Shown one piece after another: positions 390 through 40,146 of a stretch of DNA of 64,000 nt (within the stretch, counting starts at the first letter, position 1; every line of letters starts with the position of its first letter). The position numbers and the translations under genes were made by a program. The notes beneath the pieces are model-generated. The model was not told the origin of the DNA and made no database searches. It saw nothing but the letters and a program-made list of their open reading frames with translations. Location of the stretch: the IMG/VR virus record IMGVR_UViG_3300017763_000002, positions 1-64,000 of that record; one strand, 5' to 3'.

Positions 390-561
390 GAAAAACAGAG
401 AACGAGGAGTCCCAAGTCAAGAACAGCACTTGGATTTATATAAAAAAGCAAAGTTAAATTCTCACACAGGAGCTAAGCCCCTTGTGGCACACATTAACAA
501 CCCCAATGTCATGGTCACACAAAAGGTGAGAAAAGCACAAGAGGCACGAAAAAAGTCTTGA
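382..561 (+). CDS. basic hypothetical protein, 59 aa (not in ORF track)
   Basis: ATG 382 to TGA 559-561, MGKKNRERGVPSQEQHLDLYKK...QEARKKS; fills the gap between two genes; the stop lies inside the next -35 box. Confidence 0.55.
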   Translation: MGKKNRERGVPSQEQHLDLYKKAKLNSHTGAKPLVAHINNPNVMVTQKVRKAQEARKKS

Positions 562-586
562 CTTTACATACCACATTTGAGATAAT
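558..586 (+). promoter_or_regulatory. sigma70-type early promoter (leaderless)
   Basis: TTGACT-17nt-GATAAT with TG extension; ATG 593 is 6 nt downstream. Confidence 0.8.
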
Positions 587-592
587 TATATC

Positions 593-862
593 ATGTTAGA
601 TTATATTAGAGCAAACTGCGAGTTACCACCTCTTGAAGATCACCCCACTTACGACAAAGATTCTGATATGTGGGAGTTATACTTTGAAGAACTTTTACCT
701 TCTTGGTATGTAAAAAGTGAAGGAGAACATCCCGAACTAATTACCCTTCACTTTGAAACTGAGGGCGAAGCCGTAGAAATTTTACACCAACTACCAACAA
801 TCCAAAATGAAAGGATAGCTTATGAAACTACTGAGCAAAATCAAGAACCTGTTCTCTCCTAA
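593..862 (+). CDS. acidic hypothetical protein, 89 aa
   Basis: ORF track; own promoter; overlaps the next ORF. Confidence 0.7.
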   Translation: MLDYIRANCELPPLEDHPTYDKDSDMWELYFEELLPSWYVKSEGEHPELITLHFETEGEAVEILHQLPTIQNERIAYETTEQNQEPVLS

Positions 863-1052
863 GTACCAAGTGGTATATACCACTGAAGACGGAAGGACAG
901 AGCGTTATACCATCAATCGCCCGCAACACGATTACGAGTTTGGCAACAATACGGAAGGTCGTAATGTTGTTGGGTTTCGTGCTTTTTGTCATAACCGAGG
1001 AGGAATTCGTTCTTTTAGGTATGACCGAGTGAAAGCTTTAGCTAAGGTATAA
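822..1052 (+). CDS. stand-alone WYL-like domain protein, 76 aa
   Basis: C-terminal GFRAFCHNRGGIRSFRYDRV resembles the WYL signature (hxAhCxxRxxxRxFRhDRI). Confidence 0.55.
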   Translation: MKLLSKIKNLFSPKYQVVYTTEDGRTERYTINRPQHDYEFGNNTEGRNVVGFRAFCHNRGGIRSFRYDRVKALAKV

Positions 1053-1054
1053 CA

Positions 1055-1171
1055 ATGAAAACCACCGCACAAATCAAAGCTCGTATTCGTGAGCTAGGCT
1101 ATGAATTAATGCAAGCCGAAATTGCTGACAGCTATTGCGAAAATTTTGTATCGAAAAGACAGGAGCATAAC
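1055..1171 (+). CDS. 38-aa hypothetical protein (not in ORF track)
   Basis: ATG 2 nt after the upstream stop; MKTTAQIKARIRELGYELMQAEIADSYCEKFCIEKTGA. Confidence 0.45.
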
Positions 1172-1250
1172 TTGCTTCTCGAAAAGCTTTACAAGCTCGA
1201 AAAACGAGTGTTTTAAATACTTTCATAACTTGTTCGAACAAATGCAGCTC

Positions 1251-1289
1251 GCCCCCATCCTTATTGCTAGGGTGGGGGCTTTGTTGTTG
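1251..1289 (+). terminator. intrinsic terminator
   Basis: GCCCCCATCCT-7nt loop-AGGGTGGGGGC stem (one G-U pair) followed by TTTGTTGTT. Confidence 0.7.
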
Positions 1290-1356
1290 GTAGTCAAGGC
1301 TTTGTGAAATTTTCACCCTGCCGGATTTTTGCAAATCCTTGCCGGACAACGACTTA
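1280..1356. repeat. 77-bp double-dyad element, copy A
   Basis: Two YAA-N4-TTG-N5-CAA-N4-TTR dyads start at 1280 and 1332 (52 bp apart) around a 27-bp A-tract/GC core. Confidence 0.75.
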
Positions 1357-1393
1357 GGCACTGAAAAAAATGTATTTATTAGTCATTTTATGC

Positions 1394-1421
1394 TTGCACT
1401 TTGTTTGTCTTCTGTCATAAT
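1394..1421 (+). promoter_or_regulatory. sigma70-type early promoter (leaderless)
   Basis: TTGCAC-16nt-CATAAT with TG extension; ATG 1429 is 7 nt downstream. Confidence 0.7.
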
Positions 1422-1428
1422 TATATAC

Positions 1429-1662
1429 ATGAAGATTAATGATAACAATCCACCATTCGACCCAAACGCAGAAGATGCAGTGCATGCTATCTTGGATGTT
1501 CTTAACGAAATGTTTATTCAACCTGCCTACAACGCAGGCGAGATTGACTCAGAAGATGAAGAAGTTCTCTTCAACATTCTTGGTGCAATGAAGATCATCG
1601 GGCAAAAAGCAAGAGCTTACGAAATTATAGAAGATCAAGATTCTTCCCTTTATCGTAATTAA
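1429..1662 (+). CDS. acidic hypothetical protein, 77 aa (start refined from 1339)
   Basis: MKINDNNPPFDPNAEDAVHAIL...; the start fits the promoter position. Confidence 0.7.
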   Translation: MKINDNNPPFDPNAEDAVHAILDVLNEMFIQPAYNAGEIDSEDEEVLFNILGAMKIIGQKARAYEIIEDQDSSLYRN

Positions 1663-1666
1663 TTGC

Positions 1667-1695
1667 TTGACTTTTACTATATATTCACTTATACT
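1667..1695 (+). promoter_or_regulatory. sigma70-type promoter
   Basis: TTGACT-17nt-TATACT; A-rich leader without an SD to ATG 1735. Confidence 0.75.
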
Positions 1696-1734
1696 TATAT
1701 TATAACAATCGAAAATCCTAAACTTAAAAAAAAT

Positions 1735-2532
1735 ATGTTAGATACAACTCAAGAAACCCCTCGTCTTAACCTCCGCATTTGCGGTAATCGCTCATCCATT
1801 GTTGATATGGACGCTGTTCGCAGAGTACCAACTCCGCAACCAACCAACAGATGGAAACCAATCCCGCACTCAAAAGTTGTAGATGTTACTCGCAACAATC
1901 TTGAAGATAAAGGTTTTGAGATTCTCAATGAATGTCACAATGTCACCAAAGGCGGTGAGCATTACTTTGGAATGTTTCAAGTTAATCATGCAGACCTTTC
2001 CGACAATGGCGGTGAGCGTGGTTGTGTAGTTGGCATGAGAAATTCACATGACAAACTTTTCGCAGCAGGTTTGTGTGCAGGTGACGCTCCATTTATTTGC
2101 GACAATCTCATCTTTCACAATGAAGTTGTTTTCACTCGCAAGCATGTCGGAGATGTAAACAAAGAACTCGTAGATCGAGTGCAAAAGATCACCGAGTATC
2201 TCATCCCAATGTGGACTCGCCAAAACGATAGAGTTGCATCTTACAAAGAGGTGGCACTCAATGATCGTGAAGCCCAACATCTTATTTTCGATGTTTACGA
2301 GGCAGGAATCAAGACCAATCTTATTGGCAAATCCCTTCCTACCCAAGCGTGGGAGCAATGGAAAAGTTCCGATCACAAAGTCTTTCAAGATCGTAACCTC
2401 AATTCGCTTTACAACGCTTTTACCGAAGTGAGCAAAGGACGCAATGTCATGCACTTGCCCAAAAGATCAGAAATCTTTCACAATGCTTTTGATCCTGTAG
2501 CAGGAGTAGAGTCTTTCGAGCTTGTAGCTTAA
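1735..2532 (+). CDS. DUF932 family protein (start refined from 1663)
   Basis: PTPQPTNRWKPIPH and MRNSHDKLFAAGLCAGDAPFICDNL match the DUF932 NSHD...AG...VC.N pattern. Confidence 0.7.
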   Translation: MLDTTQETPRLNLRICGNRSSIVDMDAVRRVPTPQPTNRWKPIPHSKVVDVTRNNLEDKGFEILNECHNVTKGGEHYFGMFQVNHADLSDNGGERGCVVGMRNSHDKLFAAGLCAGDAPFICDNLIFHNEVVFTRKHVGDVNKELVDRVQKITEYLIPMWTRQNDRVASYKEVALNDREAQHLIFDVYEAGIKTNLIGKSLPTQAWEQWKSSDHKVFQDRNLNSLYNAFTEVSKGRNVMHLPKRSEIFHNAFDPVAGVESFELVA

Positions 2533-2562
2533 TTTTAACACTAAAAAAAGGAAATCATAATT

Positions 2563-2790
2563 ATGAAATGCCGTAATCTCAACGAAGTATTAGACTCACG
2601 CAAGGGACGATTTGTATCTGTCCTCCTTAAAAACGGACTAAAGCGAGAGCTTTATTCCGCTAAGGTTCACGATTACAACTCCAAGGTTGTCCGCTTCAAG
2701 GACACCAATGGAGGTGAGCGTAGGGTCAGCAGATCTAAGATTGTAAGGGTAAAGGTCGCAGAGCGTGCCTTTAAGCGTACAAGAGCTTAG
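2563..2790 (+). CDS. basic hypothetical protein, 75 aa (small beta-barrel-like)
   Basis: ORF track; followed by a terminator. Confidence 0.7.
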   Translation: MKCRNLNEVLDSRKGRFVSVLLKNGLKRELYSAKVHDYNSKVVRFKDTNGGERRVSRSKIVRVKVAERAFKRTRA

Positions 2791-2806
2791 GTCAAATACC
2801 TAACCT

Positions 2807-2839
2807 AAAAAGCCCCTTGTGAAAGCAAGGGGTTTTTTT
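2807..2839 (+). terminator. intrinsic terminator
   Basis: CCCCTTGT-GAAA-GCAAGGGG hairpin followed by T7, preceded by an A-run. Confidence 0.9.
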
Positions 2840-2840
2840 G

Positions 2841-2917
2841 TATCTTGTTGTCTTGGAGTGACTTGCGAAATTTCCGGCCCGTAAATTTTTCGCAAGTTAT
2901 TGATAGTGATAGGTTTA
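2841..2917. repeat. 77-bp double-dyad element, copy B
   Basis: Dyads start at 2841 and 2893 (52 bp apart); core CGAAATTTCCGGCCCGTAAATTTTTCG. Confidence 0.7.
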
Positions 2918-2934
2918 TGTGTGAAAAAAAAGTG

Positions 2935-2962
2935 TTGACACGCTCGGTCTATATGTTATTAT
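2935..2962 (+). promoter_or_regulatory. sigma70-type early promoter (leaderless)
   Basis: A-tract, then TTGACA-16nt-TATTAT with TG extension; ATG 2969 is 6 nt downstream. Confidence 0.8.
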
Positions 2963-2968
2963 ATAGAT

Positions 2969-3385
2969 ATGATTAGAACAAAACCAGACTCTCGCTACGA
3001 CATCGACTATGACCGAAAGGTGTTCGTATACAAAAACCTTCATAAGAATTGCTGGAGCGTTCGCCAGGACGGATTAGTCAAGGCTCATTCGGATGGATCT
3101 CCAATTTCTATATATTCAGCAACAATGAAGGTGAACCAAAAAGGTCGTGAGCGTGTGATTCGTGAAAAGAGCAAGAATGTTCATGCCGGTGTCTCAGGCT
3201 ATCTTCGCTTTTACCTAGACACTGTGTGGCACGGATGGGTTGACATGGTCGAGATAACATACAATCCTTACAAGTATGAGTCTTTTGTACATGTCCAAAA
3301 CAAAAAGCCAAGATGGTTTGCCAGTATTTGCAAACTTTATCAAGATAAAGTTCTAGTTGAGGCTATTCGGGGCTTGACAGATTAA
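2969..3385 (+). CDS. conserved phage hypothetical protein, 138 aa
   Basis: VYKNLHKNCWSVR...GRERVIREKSKNVHA, a motif I recall from a widespread uncharacterised phage family. Confidence 0.75.
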   Translation: MIRTKPDSRYDIDYDRKVFVYKNLHKNCWSVRQDGLVKAHSDGSPISIYSATMKVNQKGRERVIREKSKNVHAGVSGYLRFYLDTVWHGWVDMVEITYNPYKYESFVHVQNKKPRWFASICKLYQDKVLVEAIRGLTD

Positions 3386-3402
3386 TTTATTTTCATTAGT
3401 AT
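3374..3402 (+). promoter_or_regulatory. sigma70-type early promoter (leaderless)
   Basis: TTGACA-17nt-TAGTAT; ATG 3409 is 6 nt downstream; the -35 lies in the last codons of the upstream gene. Confidence 0.8.
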
Positions 3403-3408
3403 AGTATC

Positions 3409-4146
3409 ATGATTAAAACAACACTTCTCACATCAGGCAATCAAAAAATTCTCAAAGGAGAAAAAATGGGTTACATTACGAAAGGCATTCATCTTGCCCC
3501 AGCAAATCTTGCGGGCTACGAAGTTTGTCGTTGGCGTTCCAAAGGATGCACAATGTCTTGTCTTAACACAGCAGGTCGTGGTCAAATGAATAGCGTTCAG
3601 CAATCACGCATTGCAAAGACAAAGTTATTCTTTGAGCGTAAAGCTGAGTTTATGACTAAGCTATGCAAAGAGATTACAAGCACTTACCGCTCGGCTCTCA
3701 AGAAAGAAATGCAAGCTGTTTTCCGTCTCAATCTTACAAGTGACATTTCATGGGAAGATGTTCAGCTATTTAAAGGCTCAAACATTTTTAAGCACTTTGA
3801 GGGCATTCAGTTCTACGATTATACTAAGTCATTCAAAAGAATGTGTTCTTTCCTCGATAAGCCGTTCATCAAGGGCGAAGCAAAGTTTCCTTCCAATTAT
3901 CATTTAACCTTCTCTCGTAGTGAAAACAACGACAAGAAGTGTGAGATGGTTCTTGCTATGGGTGGCAATGTTGCGGTTGTATTTCGCAATCAGTTGCCTA
4001 AGACTTGGAAAGGTTACGAGGTTGTCAATGGTGATGATACTGACTTGCGTTTTCTTGACAGCCGTGGTGTTGTTGTTGGTCTTATTGAAAAGGGCATGGC
4101 AAAGAAAGATTCCACAGGCTTTGTGCAAGAAGGTATTGACTCCTAA
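3409..4146 (+). CDS. GP88 family phage protein (radical-SAM-like Cys triad)
   Basis: VCRWRSKGCTMSCLNTAGRG, FRLNLTSDI, FYDYTK, YHLTFS, GDDTDLRFLD and KGMAKKD motifs typical of GP88. Confidence 0.8.
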   Translation: MIKTTLLTSGNQKILKGEKMGYITKGIHLAPANLAGYEVCRWRSKGCTMSCLNTAGRGQMNSVQQSRIAKTKLFFERKAEFMTKLCKEITSTYRSALKKEMQAVFRLNLTSDISWEDVQLFKGSNIFKHFEGIQFYDYTKSFKRMCSFLDKPFIKGEAKFPSNYHLTFSRSENNDKKCEMVLAMGGNVAVVFRNQLPKTWKGYEVVNGDDTDLRFLDSRGVVVGLIEKGMAKKDSTGFVQEGIDS

Positions 4147-4163
4147 TCTCAATTTGATATAAT
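4136..4163 (+). promoter_or_regulatory. sigma70-type early promoter (leaderless)
   Basis: TTGACT-16nt-TATAAT; ATG 4170 is 6 nt downstream. Confidence 0.85.
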
Positions 4164-4169
4164 TAAGTT

Positions 4170-4379
4170 ATGAAAAAGACAAAATTTATCTTAACATTAT
4201 CTAACGATAGCATTCCCATCATAGCGGAGGTTTGTGCCTTGAGGGTATTAGAAAGTGATGAAAAAGTATTGGGAAGAGCTTGTGTTATGGAAAATGTAAA
4301 AAAGAAAAACTTTATCGACATAACAAGAAAAGCCAATTATAAAGAAGGAAAGTTATATGCCCAGGCAGACTATGTATAA
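4170..4379 (+). CDS. hypothetical protein, 69 aa
   Basis: ORF track; own promoter; last gene of the rightward early block. Confidence 0.7.
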   Translation: MKKTKFILTLSNDSIPIIAEVCALRVLESDEKVLGRACVMENVKKKNFIDITRKANYKEGKLYAQADYV

Positions 4380-4411
4380 ATAGCCAAATAGAGCAAATAA
4401 ATAGCCAAATA
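4378..4411. repeat. 13-bp direct repeat AAATAGCCAAATA x2
   Basis: Exact copies at 4378-4390 and 4399-4411, 21 bp apart. Confidence 0.7.
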
Positions 4412-4438
4412 CATTATTTTTTTAATCATATCAATCTG

Positions 4439-4515
4439 TAAGTCGTTGAAGTTCAATGGCTTGCAGATTTTTTGCCCCGTCAGTTTTTTGCAAACTGTTG
4501 GCTATCAGCGTTTTA
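4439..4515. repeat. 77-bp double-dyad element, copy C
   Basis: TAAGTCGTTG-AAGTT-CAATGGCTTG, 27-bp core, CAAACTGTTG-GCTAT-CAGCGTTTTA; sits at the convergence of the two early blocks. Confidence 0.8.
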
Positions 4516-4517
4516 GG

Positions 4518-4598
4518 TTAACGCTTTAGAGTAGGATAGAATAATTCTTTGATGCCACCGATCACGCACGAAACGAGAAAAATTGTAATCAATTCCAT
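4518..4598 (-). CDS. 26-aa hydrophobic micropeptide (not in ORF track)
   Basis: MELITIFLVSCVIGGIKELFYPTLKR; the start overlaps the upstream stop (TAATG). Confidence 0.55.
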   Translation of the reverse strand: MELITIFLVSCVIGGIKELFYPTLKR

Positions 4599-4813
4599 TA
4601 CTTAGATAGTTCTAGCTTGCGGTTGTCAAGGATGAATCCGATTACTTTATTGACTCTTTCGATTGACTTGTCAATGGTTCTTTGGGCGTGTTCGCTCGCT
4701 TCCATCTCCTGAAGTAGATTACGCAAGAACTTGAGTTCTCCGTTTGTCGTTGCTAATTCCATCGCTGTTTTGTCAACAAGCTTTGGATCTTCTAGTTTTT
4801 CGATTAATTCCAT
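4598..4813 (-). CDS. helical hypothetical protein, 71 aa
   Basis: ORF track; leaderless promoter upstream. Confidence 0.75.
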   Translation of the reverse strand: MELIEKLEDPKLVDKTAMELATTNGELKFLRNLLQEMEASEHAQRTIDKSIERVNKVIGFILDNRKLELSK

Positions 4814-4819
4814 GATATT

Positions 4820-4847
4820 ATTATGAATGAATGAGTTTAAAAGTCAA
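4820..4847 (-). promoter_or_regulatory. sigma70-type early promoter (leaderless)
   Basis: TTGACT-16nt-CATAAT; ATG 4813 is 6 nt downstream. Confidence 0.8.
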
Positions 4848-4850
4848 GAC

Positions 4851-5312
4851 TTATTTAAGCTCCCAAAGTTCGGGATGAGAATCCCAATGGAAGACAAACC
4901 TGCCTTGATTTTGTTGTGCAAAGTCAATCTCGAATTGAGAAGGCTCAACACCAAAACGCAAACGAAAGTTTGCTTCCGAAGCTGAAATGCCAAGCTCTTT
5001 TTTAAGCTTAACAACTTCGCCCATGCGTGGACGAGCAAGCTTATTTTTGAAAGTCTTTTCAAGCTTTGGAGCTTTTGGGGCAAAGGTTGTGGAGTCAACT
5101 TGGAAACGCTCAGGAGCAGATTCATTCCAAAGAGTAGCAACTTCGGCAGGGTCTTTGCCGTTTGCAACAAGCTTGTGAGCCATTGACTCAAGACGCTTTT
5201 GGGAGTCAACCCCACGAGTCCAAACTGAGTGGTCGTCAGCGTAGTTGTAGAACCAGTCATGTCCTTGCAAGGCGTTTATAAAGTTGGAGAGAGTATTATC
5301 AATTTTAATCAT
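4851..5312 (-). CDS. hypothetical protein, 153 aa
   Basis: ORF track; LQGHDWFYNYADDHSVWTRG resembles a recurrent phage motif (HDW.Y.YSDD..VW..G). Confidence 0.75.
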   Translation of the reverse strand: MIKIDNTLSNFINALQGHDWFYNYADDHSVWTRGVDSQKRLESMAHKLVANGKDPAEVATLWNESAPERFQVDSTTFAPKAPKLEKTFKNKLARPRMGEVVKLKKELGISASEANFRLRFGVEPSQFEIDFAQQNQGRFVFHWDSHPELWELK

Positions 5313-5318
5313 ATCTAT

Positions 5319-5346
5319 ATATTAACAAGTTAAGGGTGAAAGTCAA
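5319..5346 (-). promoter_or_regulatory. sigma70-type early promoter (leaderless)
   Basis: TTGACT-16nt-TAATAT; ATG 5312 is 6 nt downstream. Confidence 0.8.
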
Positions 5347-5420
5347 GCTTTATTTTTTAAAACAAAGGCTAAAAGTATTTTTTCTCTTTCTGTGAGTTGT
5401 GTTTTATTAATCTTAATCAT
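5343..5420 (-). CDS. 25-aa micropeptide, LTEREKIL family copy 1 (not in ORF track)
   Basis: MIKINKTQLTEREKILLAFVLKNKA; own leaderless promoter; paralog at 7442-7507. Confidence 0.65.
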   Translation of the reverse strand: MIKINKTQLTEREKILLAFVLKNKA

Positions 5421-5426
5421 ACATAC

Positions 5427-5455
5427 AATGTAGCACATAAAACCTCAAAAGTCAA
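5427..5455 (-). promoter_or_regulatory. sigma70-type early promoter (leaderless)
   Basis: TTGACT-17nt-TACATT; ATG 5420 is 6 nt downstream. Confidence 0.75.
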
Positions 5456-5468
5456 GAAAAACTTTAAA

Positions 5469-5537
5469 CTATTTTATTGCACAATCCTTTTTTTGACGGG
5501 GTATTTTTTTTGCAAACCCTTGCCAGTCAATGATTTA
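5469..5537. repeat. half element (one dyad) plus 29-bp repeat
   Basis: CTATTTTATTGCACAATCCTTTTTTTGAC at 5469-5497 is identical to 6641-6669; dyad CAAACCCTTG-CCAGT-CAATGATTTA at 5513-5537. Confidence 0.75.
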
Positions 5538-5621
5538 CCAAGGTTTTTCTTCGGTCATTATATCTTTCCACATGATGTAGAATACGATAATCCAAGGAGA
5601 GAATAGGATAAGTTCGATCAT
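5535..5621 (-). CDS. 28-aa single-TM micropeptide (not in ORF track)
   Basis: MIELILFSPWIIVFYIMWKDIMTEEKPW; starts 4 nt after the upstream stop; its TAA is the outer half-site of the dyad. Confidence 0.6.
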   Translation of the reverse strand: MIELILFSPWIIVFYIMWKDIMTEEKPW

Positions 5622-5625
5622 GATG

Positions 5626-5841
5626 TTATTTTTTGCGTTGTTCGTGCAGTATCACTTGAAACTTCTTGCGAGCTTCTTGCACTGCATTGAGAGCGTCAAG
5701 AATAGCCATTCCTTGCGTCATTGTGCCTTGCCATTCGGGCGAGTTTGATACTTCAGCTAAGAAGTTGAGGTTGCCCTCGGCTTTAGATAGAGCTAGACCC
5801 ATGTCTAGTTCTGGGAAGTCCATTGCTTTCGATTCGTTCAT
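5626..5841 (-). CDS. helical hypothetical protein, 71 aa
   Basis: ORF track; leaderless promoter upstream. Confidence 0.75.
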   Translation of the reverse strand: MNESKAMDFPELDMGLALSKAEGNLNFLAEVSNSPEWQGTMTQGMAILDALNAVQEARKKFQVILHEQRKK

Positions 5842-5847
5842 ATTATG

Positions 5848-5876
5848 AATATAGTTTAAAAGGTTTTAAAAGTCAA
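5848..5876 (-). promoter_or_regulatory. sigma70-type early promoter (leaderless)
   Basis: TTGACT-17nt-TATATT; ATG 5841 is 6 nt downstream. Confidence 0.75.
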
Positions 5877-6154
5877 GCTTTTATTTCTGTTATTCTGTTG
5901 ATGTACCATTCGGCATTATCGCCTTCTTTACCTATAACGCCACGCTTGAATTGGACTTTGGTTTGTAGCTTGTTTACGAGAGCCTTTACCTTTCTTCTTA
6001 CTTCGTGCTTGTCTTCAGCTTGAATTTCGAAGATGTTGTTTGTCATGTGCGTATCAATGAATGAATTTGTATTAGTGTTCCACAAAGGAAGTTTTTCCTC
6101 TCGTTCTATAGAGGAGACATGAACATTTGCGATGAATTTTTTATTCTTTAACAT
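5873..6154 (-). CDS. hypothetical protein, 93 aa (start refined from 6268)
   Basis: MLKNKKFIANVHV...EIKA; starts 4 nt after the stop of 6159-6359. Confidence 0.7.
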   Translation of the reverse strand: MLKNKKFIANVHVSSIEREEKLPLWNTNTNSFIDTHMTNNIFEIQAEDKHEVRRKVKALVNKLQTKVQFKRGVIGKEGDNAEWYINRITEIKA

Positions 6155-6158
6155 TTTA

Positions 6159-6359
6159 TTATTGAAAGATGACATTGAAACGAAACTGATTGAGACCTTC
6201 GTCTCGCATGATTCTATTGAGATGAGATTCGCTTGAAGCGGTGCGAACTCGTGGGCGATCGTTGCCATCTGAGTCGATGCCTTGATCGAAGATTTTGACA
6301 GCCCAATGGGTTGACCACTTTTTTATTCTTACTTGTGTAACTTTGTTATTCTTAATCAT
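6159..6359 (-). CDS. hypothetical protein, 66 aa
   Basis: ORF track; leaderless promoter upstream. Confidence 0.7.
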   Translation of the reverse strand: MIKNNKVTQVRIKKWSTHWAVKIFDQGIDSDGNDRPRVRTASSESHLNRIMRDEGLNQFRFNVIFQ

Positions 6360-6365
6360 ATTTAC

Positions 6366-6394
6366 AATCTAATCTATTTTTTACTAAAAGTCAA
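6366..6394 (-). promoter_or_regulatory. sigma70-type early promoter (leaderless)
   Basis: TTGACT-17nt-TAGATT; ATG 6359 is 6 nt downstream. Confidence 0.8.
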
Positions 6395-6582
6395 GCTTTT
6401 TTTACATTATTTTTCATTGCAATTTTGTTTTGCAAATCCCATTCGGAAAGCCATGCCTTATTTTGTTGCAACAAGCTTTCGGCTTGCTCGCGAACTACGG
6501 CATTTTTCTCGCTGAGAATGATATCAACTAGGTCGTTGATGTCGGCTTTAACTTTTTTGATGAGTTGAATTCCTTTATCCAT
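6391..6582 (-). CDS. hypothetical protein, 63 aa
   Basis: ORF track; own promoter; ends KKA-TGA inside the next -35 box. Confidence 0.65.
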   Translation of the reverse strand: MDKGIQLIKKVKADINDLVDIILSEKNAVVREQAESLLQQNKAWLSEWDLQNKIAMKNNVKKA

Positions 6583-6588
6583 ATATAT

Positions 6589-6617
6589 AATCTAAGGGAA
6601 AAACCGGAGTAAGTCAA
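6589..6617 (-). promoter_or_regulatory. sigma70-type early promoter (leaderless)
   Basis: TTGACT-17nt-TAGATT; ATG 6582 is 6 nt downstream. Confidence 0.8.
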
Positions 6618-6640
6618 CTTTTATTTCACTTACCTTTTAG

Positions 6641-6709
6641 CTATTTTATTGCACAATCCTTTTTTTGACCCTGTGGATTTTTTGCAAATCCTTGATTATG
6701 TGTTACTTA
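6641..6709. repeat. half element (one dyad) plus 29-bp repeat
   Basis: 29-bp exact repeat of 5469-5497; dyad CAAATCCTTG-ATTAT-GTGTTACTTA at 6685-6709, whose TTA is the stop of 6707-7015. Confidence 0.75.
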
Positions 6710-7015
6710 GAACACAAGTGATTCTATGTTTTGATTAGGCACGGCAAACCAGTCGGATGGTTGAATTTTATGACCATTTAAGACAGGCTCAAAGTTGACC
6801 TGATGAACTCCGGCATTGACTATTCCGTTTACTCGCTCGCGAGTGGTTGGTGTGTTCCAGCCAGCAAGTGACCATATGACGAAACCGCTTGCGTCTCGTT
6901 TCACAATGGCGTTGCCATGTAGCCAAACGGTGTTTCCGTCTGTGCGTGTGTTGCCAACGGTCAAAGGTTGGCGGGATTCAAAGGCTGATTTGATTTGTTG
7001 TGTTACTTTTCTCAT
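6707..7015 (-). CDS. conserved phage hypothetical protein, 102 aa
   Basis: VWLHGNAIV...SLAGWNTPTTRERVNGI resembles a recurrent phage early-protein motif (LHGN.IA...GW.T.TT..RLN). Confidence 0.75.
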   Translation of the reverse strand: MRKVTQQIKSAFESRQPLTVGNTRTDGNTVWLHGNAIVKRDASGFVIWSLAGWNTPTTRERVNGIVNAGVHQVNFEPVLNGHKIQPSDWFAVPNQNIESLVF

Positions 7016-7033
7016 TTTATATTTATTGAAGGT

Positions 7034-7219
7034 TTACATGTCGAATTGACTATGGTAGCCATAGTCGATATCCTCTTGATCGGGGAATTCATTTAAGGCA
7101 AGCAAATCGTCAAGTTCGATTTGGGCGTTTATTACTTCCTGCTGAGCTTGAACATGTCCAAGTTCGGCAATCGGCGTTTGAGTCTTGATGATCTCTTTTA
7201 GTTCTGTTATTCTATCCAT
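7034..7219 (-). CDS. hypothetical protein, 61 aa (start refined from 7279)
   Basis: MDRITELKEIIKTQTPIAELGHVQAQQEV...; the start overlaps the upstream stop. Confidence 0.65.
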   Translation of the reverse strand: MDRITELKEIIKTQTPIAELGHVQAQQEVINAQIELDDLLALNEFPDQEDIDYGYHSQFDM

Positions 7220-7409
7220 GATTTGAGATGATTGGCAATTCTGCTTGGCGAAGGTCGCTGGTCTTGTAATCCCAAACAACTTCGTTTTGTTGTATGTTGC
7301 GAGCGATCTCCATTGCTTGAGCGTGGGTCTTTGCGTTGTCTACGATTTTACCAAAGAGTCTTACATCGAACCAATTGGTAAAGTTTGGGTTTTTATCTAC
7401 ATTAATCAT
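7212..7409 (-). CDS. hypothetical protein, 65 aa
   Basis: ORF track; NPNFTNWFDVRLFGKIVDNAKT; promoter upstream. Confidence 0.7.
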   Translation of the reverse strand: MINVDKNPNFTNWFDVRLFGKIVDNAKTHAQAMEIARNIQQNEVVWDYKTSDLRQAELPIISNHG

Positions 7410-7417
7410 ATTAGTAT

Positions 7418-7445
7418 ATTCTATATATTAGAGGGTGAAAGTCAA
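7418..7445 (-). promoter_or_regulatory. sigma70-type early promoter (near-leaderless)
   Basis: TTGACT-16nt-TAGAAT; ATG 7409 is 8 nt downstream; shares TTGACTTTCACCCT with the promoter at 5346. Confidence 0.8.
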
Positions 7446-7507
7446 GCCTTTTTATTAAGGATTTTAGTGATGATGAGGATTTTTTCGCGTTCTGTGAGAT
7501 TTGTCAT
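7442..7507 (-). CDS. 21-aa micropeptide, LTEREKIL family copy 2 (not in ORF track)
   Basis: MTNLTEREKILIITKILNKKA; paralog of 5343-5420. Confidence 0.6.
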   Translation of the reverse strand: MTNLTEREKILIITKILNKKA

Positions 7508-7545
7508 TTTTATCTTTGTTATATTGTTTATCTTATTATGTATAC

Positions 7546-7574
7546 AACATACCACACCAATCGACAAAAGTCAA
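7546..7574 (-). promoter_or_regulatory. sigma70-type early promoter
   Basis: A-tracts, then TTGACT-17nt-TATGTT; A-rich leader to ATG 7507. Confidence 0.7.
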
Positions 7575-7613
7575 GTATTATTTTACTTTTTTTTACTTTT
7601 TTTTATTATTACC

Positions 7614-7690
7614 TAAGTCTTTGTGTATCCGGCACTTGTGGAAATTCGACAGGGCAAAAATCTTGCAAACTCTTGCCTATTAACGACTTA
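7614..7690. repeat. 77-bp double-dyad element, copy D
   Basis: TAAGTCTTTG-TGTAT-CCGGCACTTG, 27-bp core, CAAACTCTTG-CCTAT-TAACGACTTA; the terminal TTA is the stop of 7688-7912. Confidence 0.75.
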
Positions 7691-7912
7691 GAAGTCGTCC
7701 ATTAGTAGCTCGTCTAGTGCATAGGTGTCAAGCTCAGGGTCTTGGTAGTCTGCACCGTCGGGCGTGCTAGTAGTGCCGCATTCTACTAGATAGTTAGCTA
7801 GATCTTTATAGTGCACGAAACGCCTAGCAAGCTTGTATAAGCCTTCGTCGTTGCCTAGCCATAGGGCTACATTCCAAGTAACCCAGTTAGACCAACCATT
7901 ATACCCTTCCAT
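7688..7912 (-). CDS. conserved phage protein, 74 aa (YNGW.N..TWNVALW family)
   Basis: GYNGWSNWVTWNVALWLGNDEGLY is a recurrent phage motif. Confidence 0.8.
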   Translation of the reverse strand: MEGYNGWSNWVTWNVALWLGNDEGLYKLARRFVHYKDLANYLVECGTTSTPDGADYQDPELDTYALDELLMDDF

Positions 7913-8073
7913 TACTTCGAGGCGTTAACGGGGAAAAGACCATAACGACGAGAGCCGTCATTGTGTGCTATGCGAGAGCGTAGAAGTCGCTCGGCATCAC
8001 GCTGACGCATTGCTATGGATTCGACAACCCAAACGGCACCCGCTTGGTTGAGTATAGATTTAAGTATGTACAT
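7912..8073 (-). CDS. 53-aa hypothetical protein (not in ORF track)
   Basis: MYILKSILNQAGAVWVVESIAMRQRDAERLLRSRIAHNDGSRRYGLFPVNASK; TAATG coupling to the downstream gene. Confidence 0.55.
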   Translation of the reverse strand: MYILKSILNQAGAVWVVESIAMRQRDAERLLRSRIAHNDGSRRYGLFPVNASK

Positions 8074-8087
8074 TATTAGCCTTTCGT

Positions 8088-8384
8088 TTAGGATTCAAAG
8101 ATGTCACGCATTGCACCGCTTACGCAATTCATATCTGTTAGATTTTCGTCACTATCAAAGTCATCGTCTTCTTCTGCTTCGACTGCATCGAGAGATTCAA
8201 ACTCTCCTTCGATATCACGCTCGGATGCGTGTTGTATGCCATGCTCAAGAGTAAACTCCTCGTTTGCGATTTCTTCCTCAAGGTCATTGAGTAAGTCAGC
8301 AAACTTGCCTGTGAGTTTGTTGTTGTTCTCATTGGCGAGTTCAACGGCTTTAGCGATTAGAGAGATATTATTATCATTGTTCAT
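8088..8384 (-). CDS. very acidic hypothetical protein, 98 aa (start refined from 8420)
   Basis: D/E-rich (EAEEDDDFDSDE); the start fits the promoter at 8393-8420. Confidence 0.7.
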   Translation of the reverse strand: MNNDNNISLIAKAVELANENNNKLTGKFADLLNDLEEEIANEEFTLEHGIQHASERDIEGEFESLDAVEAEEDDDFDSDENLTDMNCVSGAMRDIFES

Positions 8385-8392
8385 AGTTATGT

Positions 8393-8420
8393 ATATTATA
8401 TTATATTGAAGTAATTGCAA
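8393..8420 (-). promoter_or_regulatory. sigma70-type early promoter (near-leaderless)
   Basis: TTGCAA-16nt-TAATAT; ATG 8384 is 8 nt downstream. Confidence 0.65.
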
Positions 8421-8433
8421 GAAAAAAGTGCGA

Positions 8434-8547
8434 TTATGCGAAAGTTTTTTTATGCTTTGCCTTGCGTGGAAGCATCTTATTCTTTAGCTTGTGAGGTCTT
8501 GCCTTAGTGAAGACCATCGGTATTCTAACTTTAATTTTCTTATTCAT
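8434..8547 (-). CDS. 37-aa very basic peptide (not in ORF track)
   Basis: MNKKIKVRIPMVFTKARPHKLKNKMLPRKAKHKKTFA; own leaderless promoter. Confidence 0.6.
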   Translation of the reverse strand: MNKKIKVRIPMVFTKARPHKLKNKMLPRKAKHKKTFA

Positions 8548-8553
8548 AGATAC

Positions 8554-8582
8554 AATCTATCAAACAAATGCCTAAAAGTCAA
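8554..8582 (-). promoter_or_regulatory. sigma70-type early promoter (leaderless)
   Basis: TTGACT-17nt-TAGATT; ATG 8547 is 6 nt downstream. Confidence 0.8.
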
Positions 8583-8754: not shown

Positions 8755-8759
8755 GTGTA
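8755..8759 (+). promoter_or_regulatory. GTGTA late-type promoter motif
   Basis: GTGTA-9nt-ATG 8769. Confidence 0.6.
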
Positions 8760-8768
8760 TTTACATAC

Positions 8769-9023
8769 ATGCCCGACGAACAAGACATGATATGGCTAAA
8801 AGGAATGCAATTAAAATTAAAAGGATGCGAGGCTAAAAACAGCGATATGAAATTTTTAATTAAATTAATGCAAGACGAATTAAACAAAACAAAACAATAC
8901 ATTCATTCAGAATGCCGCCGACCTGACTTTGAGTATTCAAAGCACGTTGACATGGCATTGTCGTGGACACCTAGAAAAAGAAAAAGAATAGTTACTCAAA
9001 TAAAAAATGAAATTAAAACGTAA
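8769..9023 (+). CDS. hypothetical protein, 84 aa (start refined from 8685)
   Basis: MPDEQDMIWLKG...; start placed by the GTGTA motif; overlaps the next gene. Confidence 0.55.
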   Translation: MPDEQDMIWLKGMQLKLKGCEAKNSDMKFLIKLMQDELNKTKQYIHSECRRPDFEYSKHVDMALSWTPRKRKRIVTQIKNEIKT

Positions 9024-12665: not shown

Positions 12666-13394
12666 TTATAACATTCGCTTTATGACGTCCTCATTATCTA
12701 TTAAAATATAGTCTTGGGCTTTATTTCTTTCTGCAGTATTTGGTAGAAATTGTCCAAGAACTTCCAAAAACCTTCCGTTCCATTCTGCTCCCATGTTTTT
12801 CTTAGCCAAAAATTCCATATGATTTTTTACATCATGAATACTGTAACCCATGAAATGAATCAAGAAGTCCCCAGCTTTAAATTCAGATGGGTATTGATTG
12901 AACATTTTCCTAGGCCACGCCTCAAAGGGGTCTTCTTCTTTTTGAAGCAAGTTGATTAAAGGCGTTTGATCTCCGCCGTTCACCCTCCATTCTGGATCTA
13001 AGGTTTTAGGTAAAGAATCCCACCACTTCCAGAGAAGGTCGATTCCTCGGTATGAATTCTTCCAAATTAAAACTCCAGCATTTAGAGGCCAACTTCCTAC
13101 ATCATCAGCATAGTATACGTCTTTTGATAAGTCTTTTCTAATTATATCTTCAAGCAAAATATCATCATTTACAAAACAAGCATCTAAATCCATAAACACC
13201 ACGTAATCATATTTGTAAATATGTTTTAAAACAATGTATGGCTTTTGATTTGTTGGATTTACATCTGGAAAAGCAGATTCTTCTGCGATGTGATCGTATC
13301 CATGCTTCTCGCAATATAAAGAATTCATGTGCATGCACCCTATCATATTATTAGCGAAAGCTTTATCTCCTAATTGAACTACAGCAATTTTCAT
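12666..13394 (-). CDS. GT34/MNN10-like glycosyltransferase (start refined from 13487)
   Basis: YDYVVFMDLDA (DxD), LNAGVLIW, GDQT and FLIHFMG motifs. Confidence 0.8.
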   Translation of the reverse strand: MKIAVVQLGDKAFANNMIGCMHMNSLYCEKHGYDHIAEESAFPDVNPTNQKPYIVLKHIYKYDYVVFMDLDACFVNDDILLEDIIRKDLSKDVYYADDVGSWPLNAGVLIWKNSYRGIDLLWKWWDSLPKTLDPEWRVNGGDQTPLINLLQKEEDPFEAWPRKMFNQYPSEFKAGDFLIHFMGYSIHDVKNHMEFLAKKNMGAEWNGRFLEVLGQFLPNTAERNKAQDYILIDNEDVIKRML

Positions 13395-13404
13395 TACTAT
13401 AATA

Positions 13405-13428
13405 TACACATGCAAAATTAATAGTGTA
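13405..13428. promoter_or_regulatory. divergent pair of GTGTA motifs
   Basis: Minus strand GTGTA(13409-13405)-10nt-ATG 13394; plus strand GTGTA(13424-13428)-11nt-ATG 13440. Confidence 0.65.
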
Positions 13429-13439
13429 AAATATATTAT

Positions 13440-36391: not shown

Positions 36392-36410
36392 TTTTTAATA
36401 TAATTAAGTT

Positions 36411-38098: not shown

Positions 38099-38106
38099 TA
38101 TATTTT

Positions 38107-40131: not shown

Positions 40132-40146
40132 CGTGTACTATAAGTT

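What the first reader, a model, noticed from the sequence alone, without database searches (positions are those of the whole stretch)
558..8582. Near-universal leaderless early genes, each with its own sigma70 promoter
Seen in sequence: 14 early genes have TTGAC(T/A)/TTGCA-16/17nt-(-10), with the ATG exactly 6 nt after the -10 in 11 cases (593, 2969, 3409, 4170, 4813, 5312, 5420, 5841, 6359, 6582, 8547) and 7-8 nt in three (1429, 7409, 8384). None has an SD. Six begin ATGATTA (MIK/MIR/MIN). The same design recurs at 36411, 40781 and 57755. Established: transcription starts about 6-8 nt after the -10 hexamer, and leaderless mRNAs are translated by 70S ribosomes and tolerate stresses that block canonical initiation. 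Inference: the phage runs its takeover programme on leaderless mRNA, possibly to evade host translation shut-off or because the host favours it.
Basis: partly seen in the sequence, partly recalled or inferred. Interest (0 to 1): 0.7.

Follow-up and report, generated by a model that had tools for sequence, protein, structure and literature searches.

The report
Promoter-fused start codons in a marine jumbo phage
In this 205-kb marine phage and its many uncultured relatives, most promoters sit so close to the first gene's ATG that transcription should begin on the start codon, giving leaderless mRNAs; this design is known from a few other phages and bacteria, and here it is very consistent but has not been confirmed by RNA mapping.

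Summary
All 14 listed sites in 558-8582 have a TTGAC(T/A)- or TTGCA-type -35, a 16-17 nt spacer and a TAnnnT-type -10. The ATG follows 6 nt later in 11 cases and 7-8 nt later in three (8384 is ambiguous). Genome-wide, 18 and 10 such promoters have an ORF-opening ATG at 6 and 7 nt, against about 0.2 and 0.1 in shuffles. In 48 related IMG/VR loci there are 201 and 122 distinct cases. Orthologues keep the geometry while the upstream DNA turns over. Distant homologues in other phage groups carry GGAGG or AGGAG instead. The base before the ATG is a pyrimidine in 93-98% of cases, which is the preferred start-site context.

The design is not specific to early genes. A second promoter class, GTGTAnnAn with no -35, probably read by a phage sigma-like factor, also lies 5-6 nt before ATGs of genes outside the early region. 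Internal genes and several leadered genes outside the early region use Shine-Dalgarno sequences, so SD-dependent initiation is still used. That argues against evasion of a translation shut-off.

No transcription start site was mapped; the public RNA data were too sparse. The host is unknown and may be a verrucomicrobium. The closest precedents are Thermus phage phiYS40 and the Deinococcus-Thermus "-10 next to the ORF" pattern. This is a new member of a known kind.

The parts
558..595 (+). Class-1 promoter fused to ATG 593: -35 TTGACT 558-563, 17-nt spacer, TGn + -10 GATAAT 581-586, 6 nt, ATG (89-aa ORF 593-862)
1393..1431 (+). Class-1 promoter fused to ATG 1429: -35 (C)TTGCA(C) about 1393-1399, -10 CATAAT 1416-1421, 7 nt, ATG (77 aa, 1429-1662)
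1667..1737 (+). Exception with a leader: TTGACT-17-TATACT, then a 39-nt A-rich leader without SD to ATG 1735 (DUF932 protein, 265 aa)
2935..2971 (+). Class-1 promoter fused to ATG 2969: TTGACA-16-TGn-TATTAT-6-ATG (138 aa, Pfam Phage_L5_gp82; family model aligns from residue 14)
3374..3411 (+). Class-1 promoter fused to ATG 3409: TTGACA-17-TAGTAT-6-ATG (245 aa, Pfam GP88 aligned from residue 6). The promoter lies inside the 3' end of the preceding gene.
4136..4172 (+). Class-1 promoter fused to ATG 4170: TTGACT-16-TGn-TATAAT-6-ATG (69 aa)
4811..4847 (-). Class-1 promoter fused to ATG 4813: TTGACT-16-CATAAT-6-ATG (71 aa, 4813..4598)
5310..5346 (-). Class-1 promoter fused to ATG 5312: TTGACT-16-TGn-TAATAT-6-ATG (153 aa)
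5418..5455 (-). Class-1 promoter fused to ATG 5420: TTGACT-17-TGn-TACATT-6-ATG (25-aa micro-ORF)
5839..5876 (-). Class-1 promoter fused to ATG 5841: TTGACT-17-TATATT-6-ATG (71 aa)
6357..6394 (-). Class-1 promoter fused to ATG 6359: TTGACT-17-TAGATT-6-ATG (66 aa)
6580..6617 (-). Class-1 promoter fused to ATG 6582: TTGACT-17-TAGATT-6-ATG (63 aa)
7407..7445 (-). Class-1 promoter fused to ATG 7409: TTGACT-16-TAGAAT-8-ATG, or 18-nt spacer with GAATAT and 6 nt (65 aa)
7505..7574 (-). Exception with a leader: TTGACT-17-TGn-TATGTT, then a 38-nt leader to ATG 7507 (21-aa micro-ORF, paralogue of the 5420 peptide)
8382..8421 (-). Class-1 promoter near ATG 8384: TTGCAA -35, then -10 within a TATAATATAATATA run, 8-10 nt to the ATG (98 aa)
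8545..8582 (-). Class-1 promoter fused to ATG 8547: TTGACT-17-TGn-TAGATT-6-ATG (37 aa)
1251..1279 (+). Intrinsic terminator closing the 593 operon. Others lie at 2807-2838 and about 4433-4469, the latter between the converging + and - gene blocks.
36399..36413 (+). TATAAT-6-ATG (246 aa) with no credible -35; not the same design as the early sites
40744..40783 (+). Class-1-type promoter TTGATA-17-TATAAT-8-ATG 40781 (126 aa), upstream of the sigma-like ORF
41100..41909 (+). Phage sigma-factor-like ORF: Sigma70_r2 at 23-25 bits, r4_2 at 22 bits, PHROG sigma factor at 2.7e-7. Candidate reader of the class-2 promoters.
57753..57794 (-). Class-1 promoter TTGACA-18-TGn-TATACT-9-ATG 57755 (242 aa); predicted leader of 2-3 nt
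8755..8771 (+). Class-2 promoter GTGTATTTA, 5 nt, ATG 8769 (84 aa); marks the edge of the early block
13392..13442 (.). Divergent class-2 promoters: GTGTATATT-6-ATG 13394 (-) and GTGTAAAAT-7-ATG 13440 (+)
38093..38109 (+). Class-2 promoter GTGTAATAT-5-ATG 38107 (subtilase, 379 aa)
40133..40149 (+). Class-2 promoter GTGTACTAT-5-ATG 40147 (198 aa)
53789..53806 (-). Class-2 promoter GTGTATATT, then ATG at 53794 or 53791 (ClpB-like, about 820 aa)
59887..59905 (-). Class-2 promoter GTGTATATA-7-ATG 59889 (DUF1501, 422 aa)

Best explanation
The window is the first 64 kb of a complete 204.9-kb uncultured marine jumbo-phage genome.

**Class-1 promoters.** Its putative early region covers genome 163-205 kb plus 0-8.6 kb. 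It is divided into many short transcription units. Each unit is driven by a host-type sigma70 promoter with the consensus AAAAAnnC-TTGAC(A/T)-16/17-(TGn)TAnnnT. The promoter is placed so that the A of the first gene's ATG is the 7th or 8th base after the -10 and follows a pyrimidine, which is the position and context bacterial RNA polymerase prefers for initiation.

**Inferred consequences.** Transcripts therefore begin with AUG and have no 5' UTR and no Shine-Dalgarno sequence. Their first cistron is presumably initiated by ribosomes binding the 5'-terminal AUG. Downstream cistrons in the same unit use SD motifs, overlapping stop/start codons or A-rich spacers.

**Class-2 promoters.** A second promoter class, GTGTA(A/T)nA(T/A), has an A/T-rich upstream region and no -35. 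It sits 5-6 nt before the ATG of many genes outside the early region. It is probably read by host core polymerase carrying one of two phage sigma-like proteins, and both of those genes lie downstream of class-1 promoters. ATG-adjacent promoters are therefore a general expression architecture of this phage family in both promoter classes, maintained by selection. They are not a device peculiar to host takeover.

**Shown versus inferred.** Shown: the motifs, the spacing, the statistics and the conservation. Inferred: the start sites, leaderless translation, the early/late timing and which sigma reads which class.
For: - **Geometry of each site:**
- **Enrichment over shuffles:** d=6/7 occurs 18/10 times against 0.2/0.1 expected. 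A weight-matrix scan finds 46 sites at score >=14 against 3.2 in the null. Of the 57 sites listed at score >=13, 32 have the ATG at 5-8 nt and 4 at 9-10 nt.
- **Start-site context:** the -1 base is a pyrimidine in 41/46 leaderless candidates against 80/172 other genes, p=9e-8. Across 355 distinct family promoters it is 93% (d=6) and 98% (d=7).
- **Family-wide distances:** 48 related loci (586 kb) give 201 distinct cases at d=6 and 122 at d=7, with 13, 19 and 7 at d=5, 8 and 9 and at most 8 at any other distance.
- **Orthologues of gene 3409 (GP88):** 48/48 keep the ATG at the aligned start, with 32 distinct upstream 40-mers. All keep a -35 about 35 nt before the ATG and a -10 6-7 nt before it. 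Homologues of 43-45% identity in other phage groups have GGAGG, AGGAG or AAGGA at the SD position instead.
- **True N-termini:** the Pfam GP88 and L5_gp82 models align from residues 6 and 14. Orthologue alignments start at the same ATG for most genes.
- **Class 2:** 14 and 6 cases at the two preferred distances against about 0.35 and 0.3 expected. In relatives' terminase-region loci there are 67 and 44 distinct cases.
- **Class-1 sites are concentrated in the early region:** 12 distinct at d=6-7 in 1.03 Mb of terminase-region loci, against 323 in 0.59 Mb of early-region loci.
- **Sigma-like ORFs:**. No phage RNA polymerase domain was detected.
- **SD is used elsewhere in the genome:**
Against: - **No start site is mapped.** The only RNA data are sparse metatranscriptome contigs of about 150-370 nt, with no pile-up of 5' ends.
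- **Some contigs cross predicted promoters** (3372-3522, 6352-6503, 8543-8650+). That fits read-through transcription or DNA carry-over. If it is RNA, these ATGs also occur internally in longer transcripts.
- **Several units are not separated by terminators** (2969 to 3409 to 4170; 6582 to 6359), so polycistronic read-through is likely in addition to the unit transcripts.
- **With d=7-9 the true 5' UTR could be 1-3 nt** rather than zero.
- **The timing labels (early, middle/late) are inferred.**
- **Both sigma assignments rest on borderline domain scores.**
- **The family counts include related sequences** and are not independent events.
Confidence: 0.75

Rival explanations
1. One reading: leaderless mRNAs are a takeover device. 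Early genes are leaderless so that they are still translated while the phage, or stress, blocks canonical SD-dependent initiation of host mRNAs.
For: Class-1 ATG-adjacent promoters are concentrated in the putative early region. There is a precedent in Thermus phage phiYS40, which is reported to raise IF2 and lower IF3 and so favour its leaderless mRNAs (review PMC3594737).
Against: - The same geometry occurs in a second promoter class in front of genes outside the early region.
- The phage's own internal genes, and several leadered genes behind class-2 promoters, carry SD motifs.
- Orthologues switch between leaderless and SD-led forms.
- No IF3, S21 or S1 domain is encoded.

Nothing in the sequence points to an inhibitor of canonical initiation.
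Confidence: 0.12
2. The promoters are real but the zero-length leader is incidental. In a host that makes little use of SD, any unstructured A-rich AUG is translated. Most protein then comes from read-through polycistronic RNAs, and the tight spacing only reflects genome compaction.
For: - Some RNA-library contigs span promoters.
- Several units lack terminators between them.
- A candidate host relative shows no SD peak, and some Verrucomicrobia are classed as SD-scarce (PMC10783764).
- The first 40 nt of all genes in this genome fold weakly, not only those of the leaderless candidates: -2.4 against -1.4 kcal/mol.
Against: - Compaction alone does not explain a spacing fixed to one or two values (6-7 nt).
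- It does not explain the pyrimidine at -1, nor the retention of that spacing across at least 30 different upstream sequences per gene.
- It does not explain why the few promoters with longer leaders carry SD in some cases (AGGAG before genome 166480).
Confidence: 0.1
3. An artefact of composition or of start-codon choice: in an AT-rich genome TAnnnT hexamers fall near ATGs by chance, or the true starts lie downstream.
For: The genome is 35.8% G+C. The loose consensus scan also finds many promoter-like sites in shuffles (23 of 46).
Against: - Markov shuffles give 0.1-0.2 per distance bin against 18 and 10 observed.
- The -35 co-occurs at a fixed 16-17 nt.
- Protein-family models and orthologue alignments begin at these ATGs.
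- The upstream DNA diverges as non-coding sequence while the ATG and the spacing stay fixed.
Confidence: 0.02

Closest known systems
Thermus thermophilus phage phiYS40 (and P23-45): leaderless middle/late transcripts
   Same: A large lytic phage in which most transcripts of a temporal class start at the start codon, from promoters dominated by the -10 region. Class 2 here likewise has no -35. The phage depends on the host core RNA polymerase (review PMC3594737; my recollection of Sevostyanova et al. 2007, which I could not read).
   Different: Here the host-type -35/-10 promoters of the putative early class are leaderless as well. The host is marine and mesophilic, not Deinococcus-Thermus. No IF2/IF3 effect is known. 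The phages are unrelated: the terminase's best database hits are about 25% identical, to Bacillus and Clostridium phages.
'-10 region adjacent to ORF' expression pattern of Deinococcus-Thermus (PMC12340547)
   Same: A -10 motif a few bp upstream of the ORF drives transcription of leaderless genes, and adding a -35 increases strength.
   Different: That is a property of a bacterial phylum's own genes. Here it is a phage family's design, with a strong canonical -35, and the one candidate host relative sampled shows no such pattern.
Lambda cI from PRM and other single leaderless phage genes; leaderless genes of mycobacteria (PMC4633059)
   Same: A sigma70-type promoter with the start site on the A of the AUG, translation without SD, and a requirement for a 5'-terminal AUG (established knowledge; reviews PMC9031893 and PMC8459731, seen as titles and abstracts only).
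   Different: In lambda it is one regulatory gene. Here it is about 55-60 genes and roughly 70% of recognisable promoters.
Phage sigma cascades (T4 gp55 late promoters TATAAATA; SPO1 gp28/gp33-34)
   Same: Early genes are read by the host's primary sigma. Later classes use a short -10-like element without a -35, read by a phage sigma. This matches the class-1/class-2 split and the two sigma-like ORFs found here (the T4 and SPO1 facts are from my own knowledge).
   Different: The motif GTGTAnnAn differs. Assigning it to the phage sigma is inference. T4 and SPO1 transcripts have leaders with SD.

Membership tests
Leaderless mRNA genes | Transcription start coincides with, or lies within a few nt of, the first base of the start codon | tested here: inconclusive
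   The geometry predicts it: the ATG A is the 7th-8th base after the -10 and follows a pyrimidine. The RNA data were too sparse to show 5' ends.
Leaderless mRNA genes | AUG start codon at the 5' end | tested here: met
   All 14 sites and all but one genome-wide candidate start with ATG. The exception is a GTG at genome 68075.
Leaderless mRNA genes | No Shine-Dalgarno or other 5' UTR element | tested here: met
   The sequence upstream of the ATG is the promoter discriminator and -10. SD motifs are enriched only upstream of non-leaderless genes.
Leaderless mRNA genes | Translation initiated on the 5' AUG (70S or IF2-dependent pathway) | not testable with these tools
   Needs a biochemical or in vivo assay.
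Sigma70-type (housekeeping) promoters | -35 TTGACA-like, 17+/-1 spacer, -10 TATAAT-like, optional TGn and an A-rich UP region | tested here: met
   Consensus AAAAAnnC-TTGAC(A/T)-17-TAnnnT; TGn at 7 of the 14 sites; 46 sites at score >=14 against 3.2 in the null.
Sigma70-type (housekeeping) promoters | Recognised by host holoenzyme, and early timing | not testable with these tools
   The host is unknown and there are no expression time series.
Phage sigma-dependent late promoters (T4 or SPO1 type) | A phage-encoded sigma factor | tested here: inconclusive
   Two ORFs have borderline Sigma70_r2/r4_2 scores (23-25 bits against cut-offs of about 24-26) and PHROG sigma-factor hits at 2.7e-7 and 6.5e-7.
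Phage sigma-dependent late promoters (T4 or SPO1 type) | A short conserved -10-like element without a -35, upstream of late genes | tested here: met
   GTGTA(A/T)nA(T/A) lies upstream of the subtilase, ClpB-like and DUF1501 genes and of several large unannotated ORFs. It is enriched about 40-fold at a fixed distance and recurs in relatives.
phiYS40-like translational re-tuning (IF2 up, IF3 down) | Phage-induced change in initiation factors that favours leaderless mRNAs | not testable with these tools
   The genome encodes no IF3_C, S21 or S1 domain. An effect on host factors cannot be read from sequence.

The most novel reading that the evidence does not exclude
A cosmopolitan family of marine jumbo phages, with more than 590 terminase relatives in IMG/VR, expresses the first gene of nearly every transcription unit as a true 5'-AUG leaderless mRNA, in both the host-sigma and phage-sigma promoter classes. 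Like phiYS40, it actively shifts the host's initiation machinery towards 5'-AUG mRNAs. This would happen in a mesophilic, probably verrucomicrobial host in which leaderless translation has never been described. That would make promoter-to-ATG spacing a readable signature of translational takeover in uncultured phages.
Probability: 0.15. Interest if true: 0.75.

Novelty: new member of a known kind. Interest (0 to 1): 0.55.

Why it matters
- **Extent.** If the start sites are confirmed, this would be one of the most thorough uses of leaderless expression in any phage: roughly 55-60 genes and about 70% of recognisable promoters. It would also be in an abundant, uncultured marine lineage far from the Thermus, actinobacterial and archaeal systems where the mode is known.
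- **Annotation.** The fixed promoter-to-ATG spacing gives exact start codons and transcription-unit boundaries for hundreds of metagenomic phage contigs. It also corrects gene callers, which here extend ORFs into promoters (for example 1390 against 1429, 5438 against 5420, 180508 against 180520).
- **A natural experiment.** The same gene is leaderless in this family and SD-led in other phages, or when it is operon-internal in relatives.
- **A testable prediction about the host.** The unknown host's ribosomes should handle both 5'-AUG and SD-led mRNAs.

Tried and rejected
- **Phage identity.** Megablast against the phage collection found nothing. The terminase has only about 25% identity to Bacillus and Clostridium phages.
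- **Host identification.** The DUF1501 gene's nearest cellular homologues are Verrucomicrobiota MAGs at about 50% identity, which is only suggestive. The phage tmRNA matched 301 Verrucomicrobiota genomes only in the universal 3' ~30 nt.
- **Does the host favour leaderless genes?** The exact promoter-ATG pattern in three low-GC Opitutia/Puniceicoccaceae MAGs was no more frequent than its reversed control. A start-centred profile of 400 kb of one MAG showed no SD peak and no clear -10 peak. A cruder profile on 80 PVC loci was uninformative.
- **Phage translation or transcription factors.** No S21, IF3_C, S1, T7-type RNA polymerase or Rpb1 domain was found.
- **5' structure.** The first 40 nt of leaderless candidates fold weakly, but so do those of other genes (S70 against other, p=0.07), so this does not discriminate.
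- **Repeated intergenic element.** I considered it as a sigma54 promoter or a terminator. The GG-N10-GC spacing is inconsistent between copies and the folds are weak.
- **Literature.** I could not read the primary phiYS40 paper and relied on a review.
- **Gene calling.** My own dicodon gene caller misses several small early genes. Gene-level fractions are therefore approximate, and the main statistics were made independent of gene calls.

Full report
**What the window is.** The window is bases 1-64000 of a single 204,906-bp contig with 35.8% G+C. It is held as an IMG/VR virus record that CheckV rates 100% complete and classes as linear. The window encodes:
- a large terminase subunit;
- a DnaE-type DNA polymerase III alpha subunit;
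- a ClpB-like ATPase;
- a subtilase;
- a PD-(D/E)XK nuclease;
- a PSCyt2/PSD1 protein next to a DUF1501 protein;
- a 5,895-aa ORF.

There is no close relative among deposited phages. More than 590 terminase relatives exist in IMG/VR, and the sequence occurs nearly intact in many marine metagenomes. This is an uncultured, widespread marine jumbo phage.

**Checking the observation.** I read 1-9000 directly and recomputed each claimed site.
- The 11 sites said to have the ATG exactly 6 nt after the -10 do so: 593, 2969, 3409, 4170, 4813, 5312, 5420, 5841, 6359, 6582 and 8547.
- 1429 has 7 nt and 7409 has 8 nt. The 7409 site can also be read as 6 nt with an 18-nt spacer.
- 8384 sits in a TATAATATAATATA run, so its distance is 8-10 nt.
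- The -35 is TTGACT or TTGACA in 12 sites and TTGCA-type in two. Seven sites have an extended-10 TGn.
- Six genes begin ATGATTA.
- Of the three extra sites, 40781 and 57755 are of the same type, with 8 and 9 nt. 36411 has only TATAAT-6-ATG, with no credible -35.

**Is it more than chance?** I used a test that does not depend on gene calls. It takes every TTGACN, a 16-18 nt spacer, a -10 with at least 4/6 matches plus A2 and T6, and then any ATG that opens at least 40 codons. Over the whole genome this gives 18 hits at 6 nt, 10 at 7 nt, 4 at 8 nt and 6 at 9 nt. Almost nothing occurs at other distances. Thirty second-order Markov shuffles give about 0.1-0.2 per distance.

A weight matrix built from the seed sites has the consensus AAAAAnnC-TTGAC(A/T)-17-TAnnnT. 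It finds 46 sites at score >=14 against 3.2 expected. Of the 57 sites listed at score >=13:
- 32 have the ATG 5-8 nt after the -10;
- 4 have it at 9-10 nt;
- about 10 have leaders of 16-49 nt, one of them with a clear AGGAG;
- 7 have no ORF and are probably chance matches.

These promoters lie at 0.5-8.6 kb and at 163-205 kb, so the putative early region spans both ends of the contig. A few others sit at 57.8, 66.0, 68.1, 71.3 and 93.9/94.0 kb.

**Anatomy of 558-8582.** The region consists of short units of one to three genes.
- On the + strand there are promoters at 558, 1393, 1667 (leadered), 2935, 3374 and 4136, with terminators at 1251-1279, 2807-2838 and about 4433-4469.
- On the - strand, converging on that last terminator, there are promoters at 8582, 8421, 7574 (leadered), 7445, 6617, 6394, 5876, 5455, 5346 and 4847.
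- Fourteen of the 16 promoters are ATG-adjacent.
- Roughly 12 further genes are internal. Some have SD-like motifs (AAAGGA before 822, TAAGGT before 1055, AAGGAA before 2563, AAAGG before 8073). Others overlap stop and start codons.

'Near-universal' therefore holds for transcription units, not for genes. 'Early' is an inference.

**Evidence that the A of the ATG is the start site.** The -10 hexamer occupies -12 to -7. Six intervening bases therefore put the ATG's A at +1, and seven put it one base further. These are the two most used positions for bacterial RNA polymerase, which also prefers a pyrimidine at -1 and a purine at +1 (established knowledge).
- In this genome the base before the ATG is a pyrimidine in 23/26 class-1 and 18/20 class-2 candidates. 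For other genes it is 80/172 (Fisher p=9e-8).
- Among 355 distinct promoter-ATG junctions from this genome and its relatives it is a pyrimidine in 93% (d=6) and 98% (d=7). G is at about 1%.
- The initial coding sequence is A-rich (82-86% A at +4) and poor in G.
- It folds weakly, at -1.4 kcal/mol for the first 40 nt against -4.7 for internal segments of the same genes. Other genes' starts are also weakly folded, so this feature does not discriminate.

**Comparative evidence.** Gene 3409-4146 (Pfam GP88) has homologues in 80 IMG/VR loci.
- In the roughly 50 members of this phage family (69-89% protein identity) the upstream DNA has diverged into many unrelated sequences.
- Every one keeps a -35 about 35-36 nt before the ATG and a -10 6-7 nt before it.
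- In phage groups with 43-45% identity the same gene is preceded by GGAGG, AGGAG or AAGGA at the normal SD distance.
- Across 48 related early-region loci (586 kb) the distinct promoter-to-ATG distances are 13, 201, 122, 19 and 7 at 5, 6, 7, 8 and 9 nt. No other distance exceeds 8.

For each of the 14 genes I looked for orthologues in these loci.
- The ATG lies at the aligned N-terminus in most (43/43 for 2969, 48/48 for 3409, 42/42 for 7409, 35/35 for 593).
- The promoter signature is present in 40/43 and 42/48 for the first two. The apparent exceptions are CTTGTG/CTTGCG variants of the same design.
- For 593 only 12/35 orthologues are promoter-adjacent. The others are operon-internal, and several carry GGAGG or AAGGAG.

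The same protein is thus expressed leaderless or SD-led depending on its position. The Pfam models for GP88 and L5_gp82 align from residues 6 and 14, so these ATGs are the true N-termini.

**A second promoter class.** Listing the upstream regions of all called genes revealed a second recurrent motif, GTGTA(A/T)nA(T/A). It has an A/T-rich upstream region and no -35, and it ends 5-6 nt before the ATG.
- Genome-wide there are 14 and 6 cases at the two preferred distances, against about 0.35 and 0.3 in shuffles.
- In relatives' terminase-region loci there are 67 and 44 distinct cases.
- It precedes the subtilase (38107), the ClpB-like gene (53794), DUF1501 (59889) and large unannotated ORFs at genome positions 147126, 159134 and 159206.
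- Class-1 sites are rare outside the early region: 12 distinct at d=6-7 in 1.03 Mb.
- Some class-2 promoters have leaders of 17-22 nt carrying AAGG/AGGA motifs (18190, 120696, 135018, 137166).

The genome encodes two sigma-like proteins. One is at 41100-41909 (Sigma70_r2 23-25 bits, r4_2 22 bits, PHROG sigma factor 2.7e-7). The other is at genome 92414-93019 (PHROG sigma factor 6.5e-7). Each lies downstream of a class-1 promoter, at 40744 and 93877. No phage RNA polymerase domain was detected.

The most economical scheme is as follows. The host holoenzyme reads class 1. This produces the phage sigma(s), which redirect core polymerase to class 2. This is inference.

The physical claim, promoter-fused start codons predicting leaderless mRNAs, is well supported by sequence statistics and conservation. 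The functional story needs revision.
- ATG-adjacent promoters are found in both classes.
- SD motifs are enriched upstream of the remaining genes: 7-11 per offset at -15 to -11, against 2.0 expected.
- The phage therefore does not rely on a state in which canonical initiation is abolished.
- The genome encodes no S21, IF3 or S1 domain.
- The alternative, 'the host favours it', is untestable without a host.

On the host:
- The DUF1501 gene points weakly to Verrucomicrobiota, at about 50% identity.
- A low-GC Puniceicoccaceae MAG sampled over 400 kb shows no SD peak and no -10-adjacent peak.
- The strict promoter-ATG pattern is not enriched in three such MAGs.
- Some Verrucomicrobia have been classed as SD-scarce (PMC10783764).

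**RNA evidence.** Public metatranscriptomes contain fragments of the region. Laying four of them on 2850-8650 gave only 3-13 short low-depth contigs per run and no pile-up of ends. Some contigs cross predicted promoters (3372-3522, 6352-6503, 8543-8650+). This is compatible with read-through from upstream units that lack terminators, or with DNA in the libraries. Loose ends from relatives in run X18 show the same arrangement in a variant sequence (TAGAAT-ATAATC-ATG at 8532). Read-through probably coexists with unit transcripts.

**Comparison with what is known.**
- The closest precedent is Thermus phage phiYS40. It makes most middle and late transcripts without a leader and is reported to raise IF2 and lower IF3 (review PMC3594737).
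- A second is the '-10 adjacent to ORF' pattern of Deinococcus-Thermus (PMC12340547).
- Single leaderless genes such as lambda cI, and the leaderless-rich mycobacteria (PMC4633059, seen as title and abstract), work the same way.
- By contrast, mapped jumbo phages such as phiKZ (no leaderless transcript; PMC8244752) and AR9 (UTRs of 26-491 nt; PMC5312081) have leaders.
- I found no description of this phage family or its promoters.

The mechanism is known. What is new is its extent, its presence in host-type -35/-10 promoters, the second promoter class, and the lineage and habitat.

**Verdict.**
- Observation: confirmed.
- Interpretation: partly supported.
- Novelty: a new member of a known kind.
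- Interest: moderate (0.55).
- Probability that these genes are truly leaderless, with a UTR of 0-3 nt: about 0.75.
- Probability that this is a takeover-specific escape from translation shut-off: about 0.1.

Noticed in passing
window 1300-1352, 2858-2905, 4470-4515, 5480-5530, 6655-6700, 7630-7690: An intergenic element of about 55 bp with the core TTTTTGCAAA(T/C)CCTTGCC, often followed by ACGACTTAG. It occurs six times between early transcription units, always in + orientation whatever the strand of the flanking genes. It is confined to this 6.5-kb stretch, was not found as such in relatives, and folds only weakly. Its function is unknown; a DNA-level site is possible.
   Followed up: partly
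window 5343-5420 (-) and 7442-7507 (-): Two paralogous micro-ORFs share an LTER(E/K)KIL core: a 25-aa one (MIKINKTQLTERKKILLAFVLKNKA), which is leaderless, and a 21-aa one (MTNLTEREKILIITKILNK), which has a 38-nt leader. The 25-aa one has 9 orthologues in relatives, all with the promoter 6 nt before the ATG.
   Followed up: partly
genome 169776-170138 (+), outside the window (L264:377-739): A phage-encoded tmRNA (Rfam RF00023, 139.8 bits) with tag peptide AKNIVSFEDFVHSEELALAA, plus a tRNA-Thr(tgt) at 179633-179708. The tmRNA sits in the early region just downstream of the leaderless gene at 169474.
   Followed up: partly
window 18704-36391 (+): A single 5,895-aa ORF, about 9% of the genome, with no promoter directly upstream. 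It follows a class-2 promoter unit that starts at 18190. I did not characterise it.
   Followed up: no
window 58621-61948 (-): Adjacent PSCyt2/PSD1 (DUF1549/DUF1553, 680 aa) and DUF1501 (422 aa) genes, a pair typical of Planctomycetota and Verrucomicrobiota. The nearest cellular DUF1501 homologues are Verrucomicrobiota MAGs at about 50% identity. DUF1501 is preceded by a class-2 promoter.
   Followed up: partly
window 41100-41909 (+) and genome 92414-93019 (-): Two divergent sigma-factor-like ORFs, each downstream of a class-1 (host-type) promoter. This suggests a sigma cascade.
   Followed up: partly
window 1390/1429, 5438/5420; genome 180508/180520: Longest-ORF gene calling extends these genes into their own promoters, to an ATG inside the -35 or -10. 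The promoter geometry indicates the shorter start.
   Followed up: yes
genome 204743-204906 joined to window 1-180: A strong TTGACA-17-TATAAT promoter at 204743 is followed by no ORF before the contig end. The contig has no terminal repeat, and the ORF at window 10-174 begins just inside the left end.
   Followed up: no
genome 68075 (-): A strong class-1 promoter (TTGACA-17-TATACT) with GTG, not ATG, 6 nt after the -10 (110-aa ORF). This is a possible leaderless GTG start, which would be unusual.
   Followed up: no
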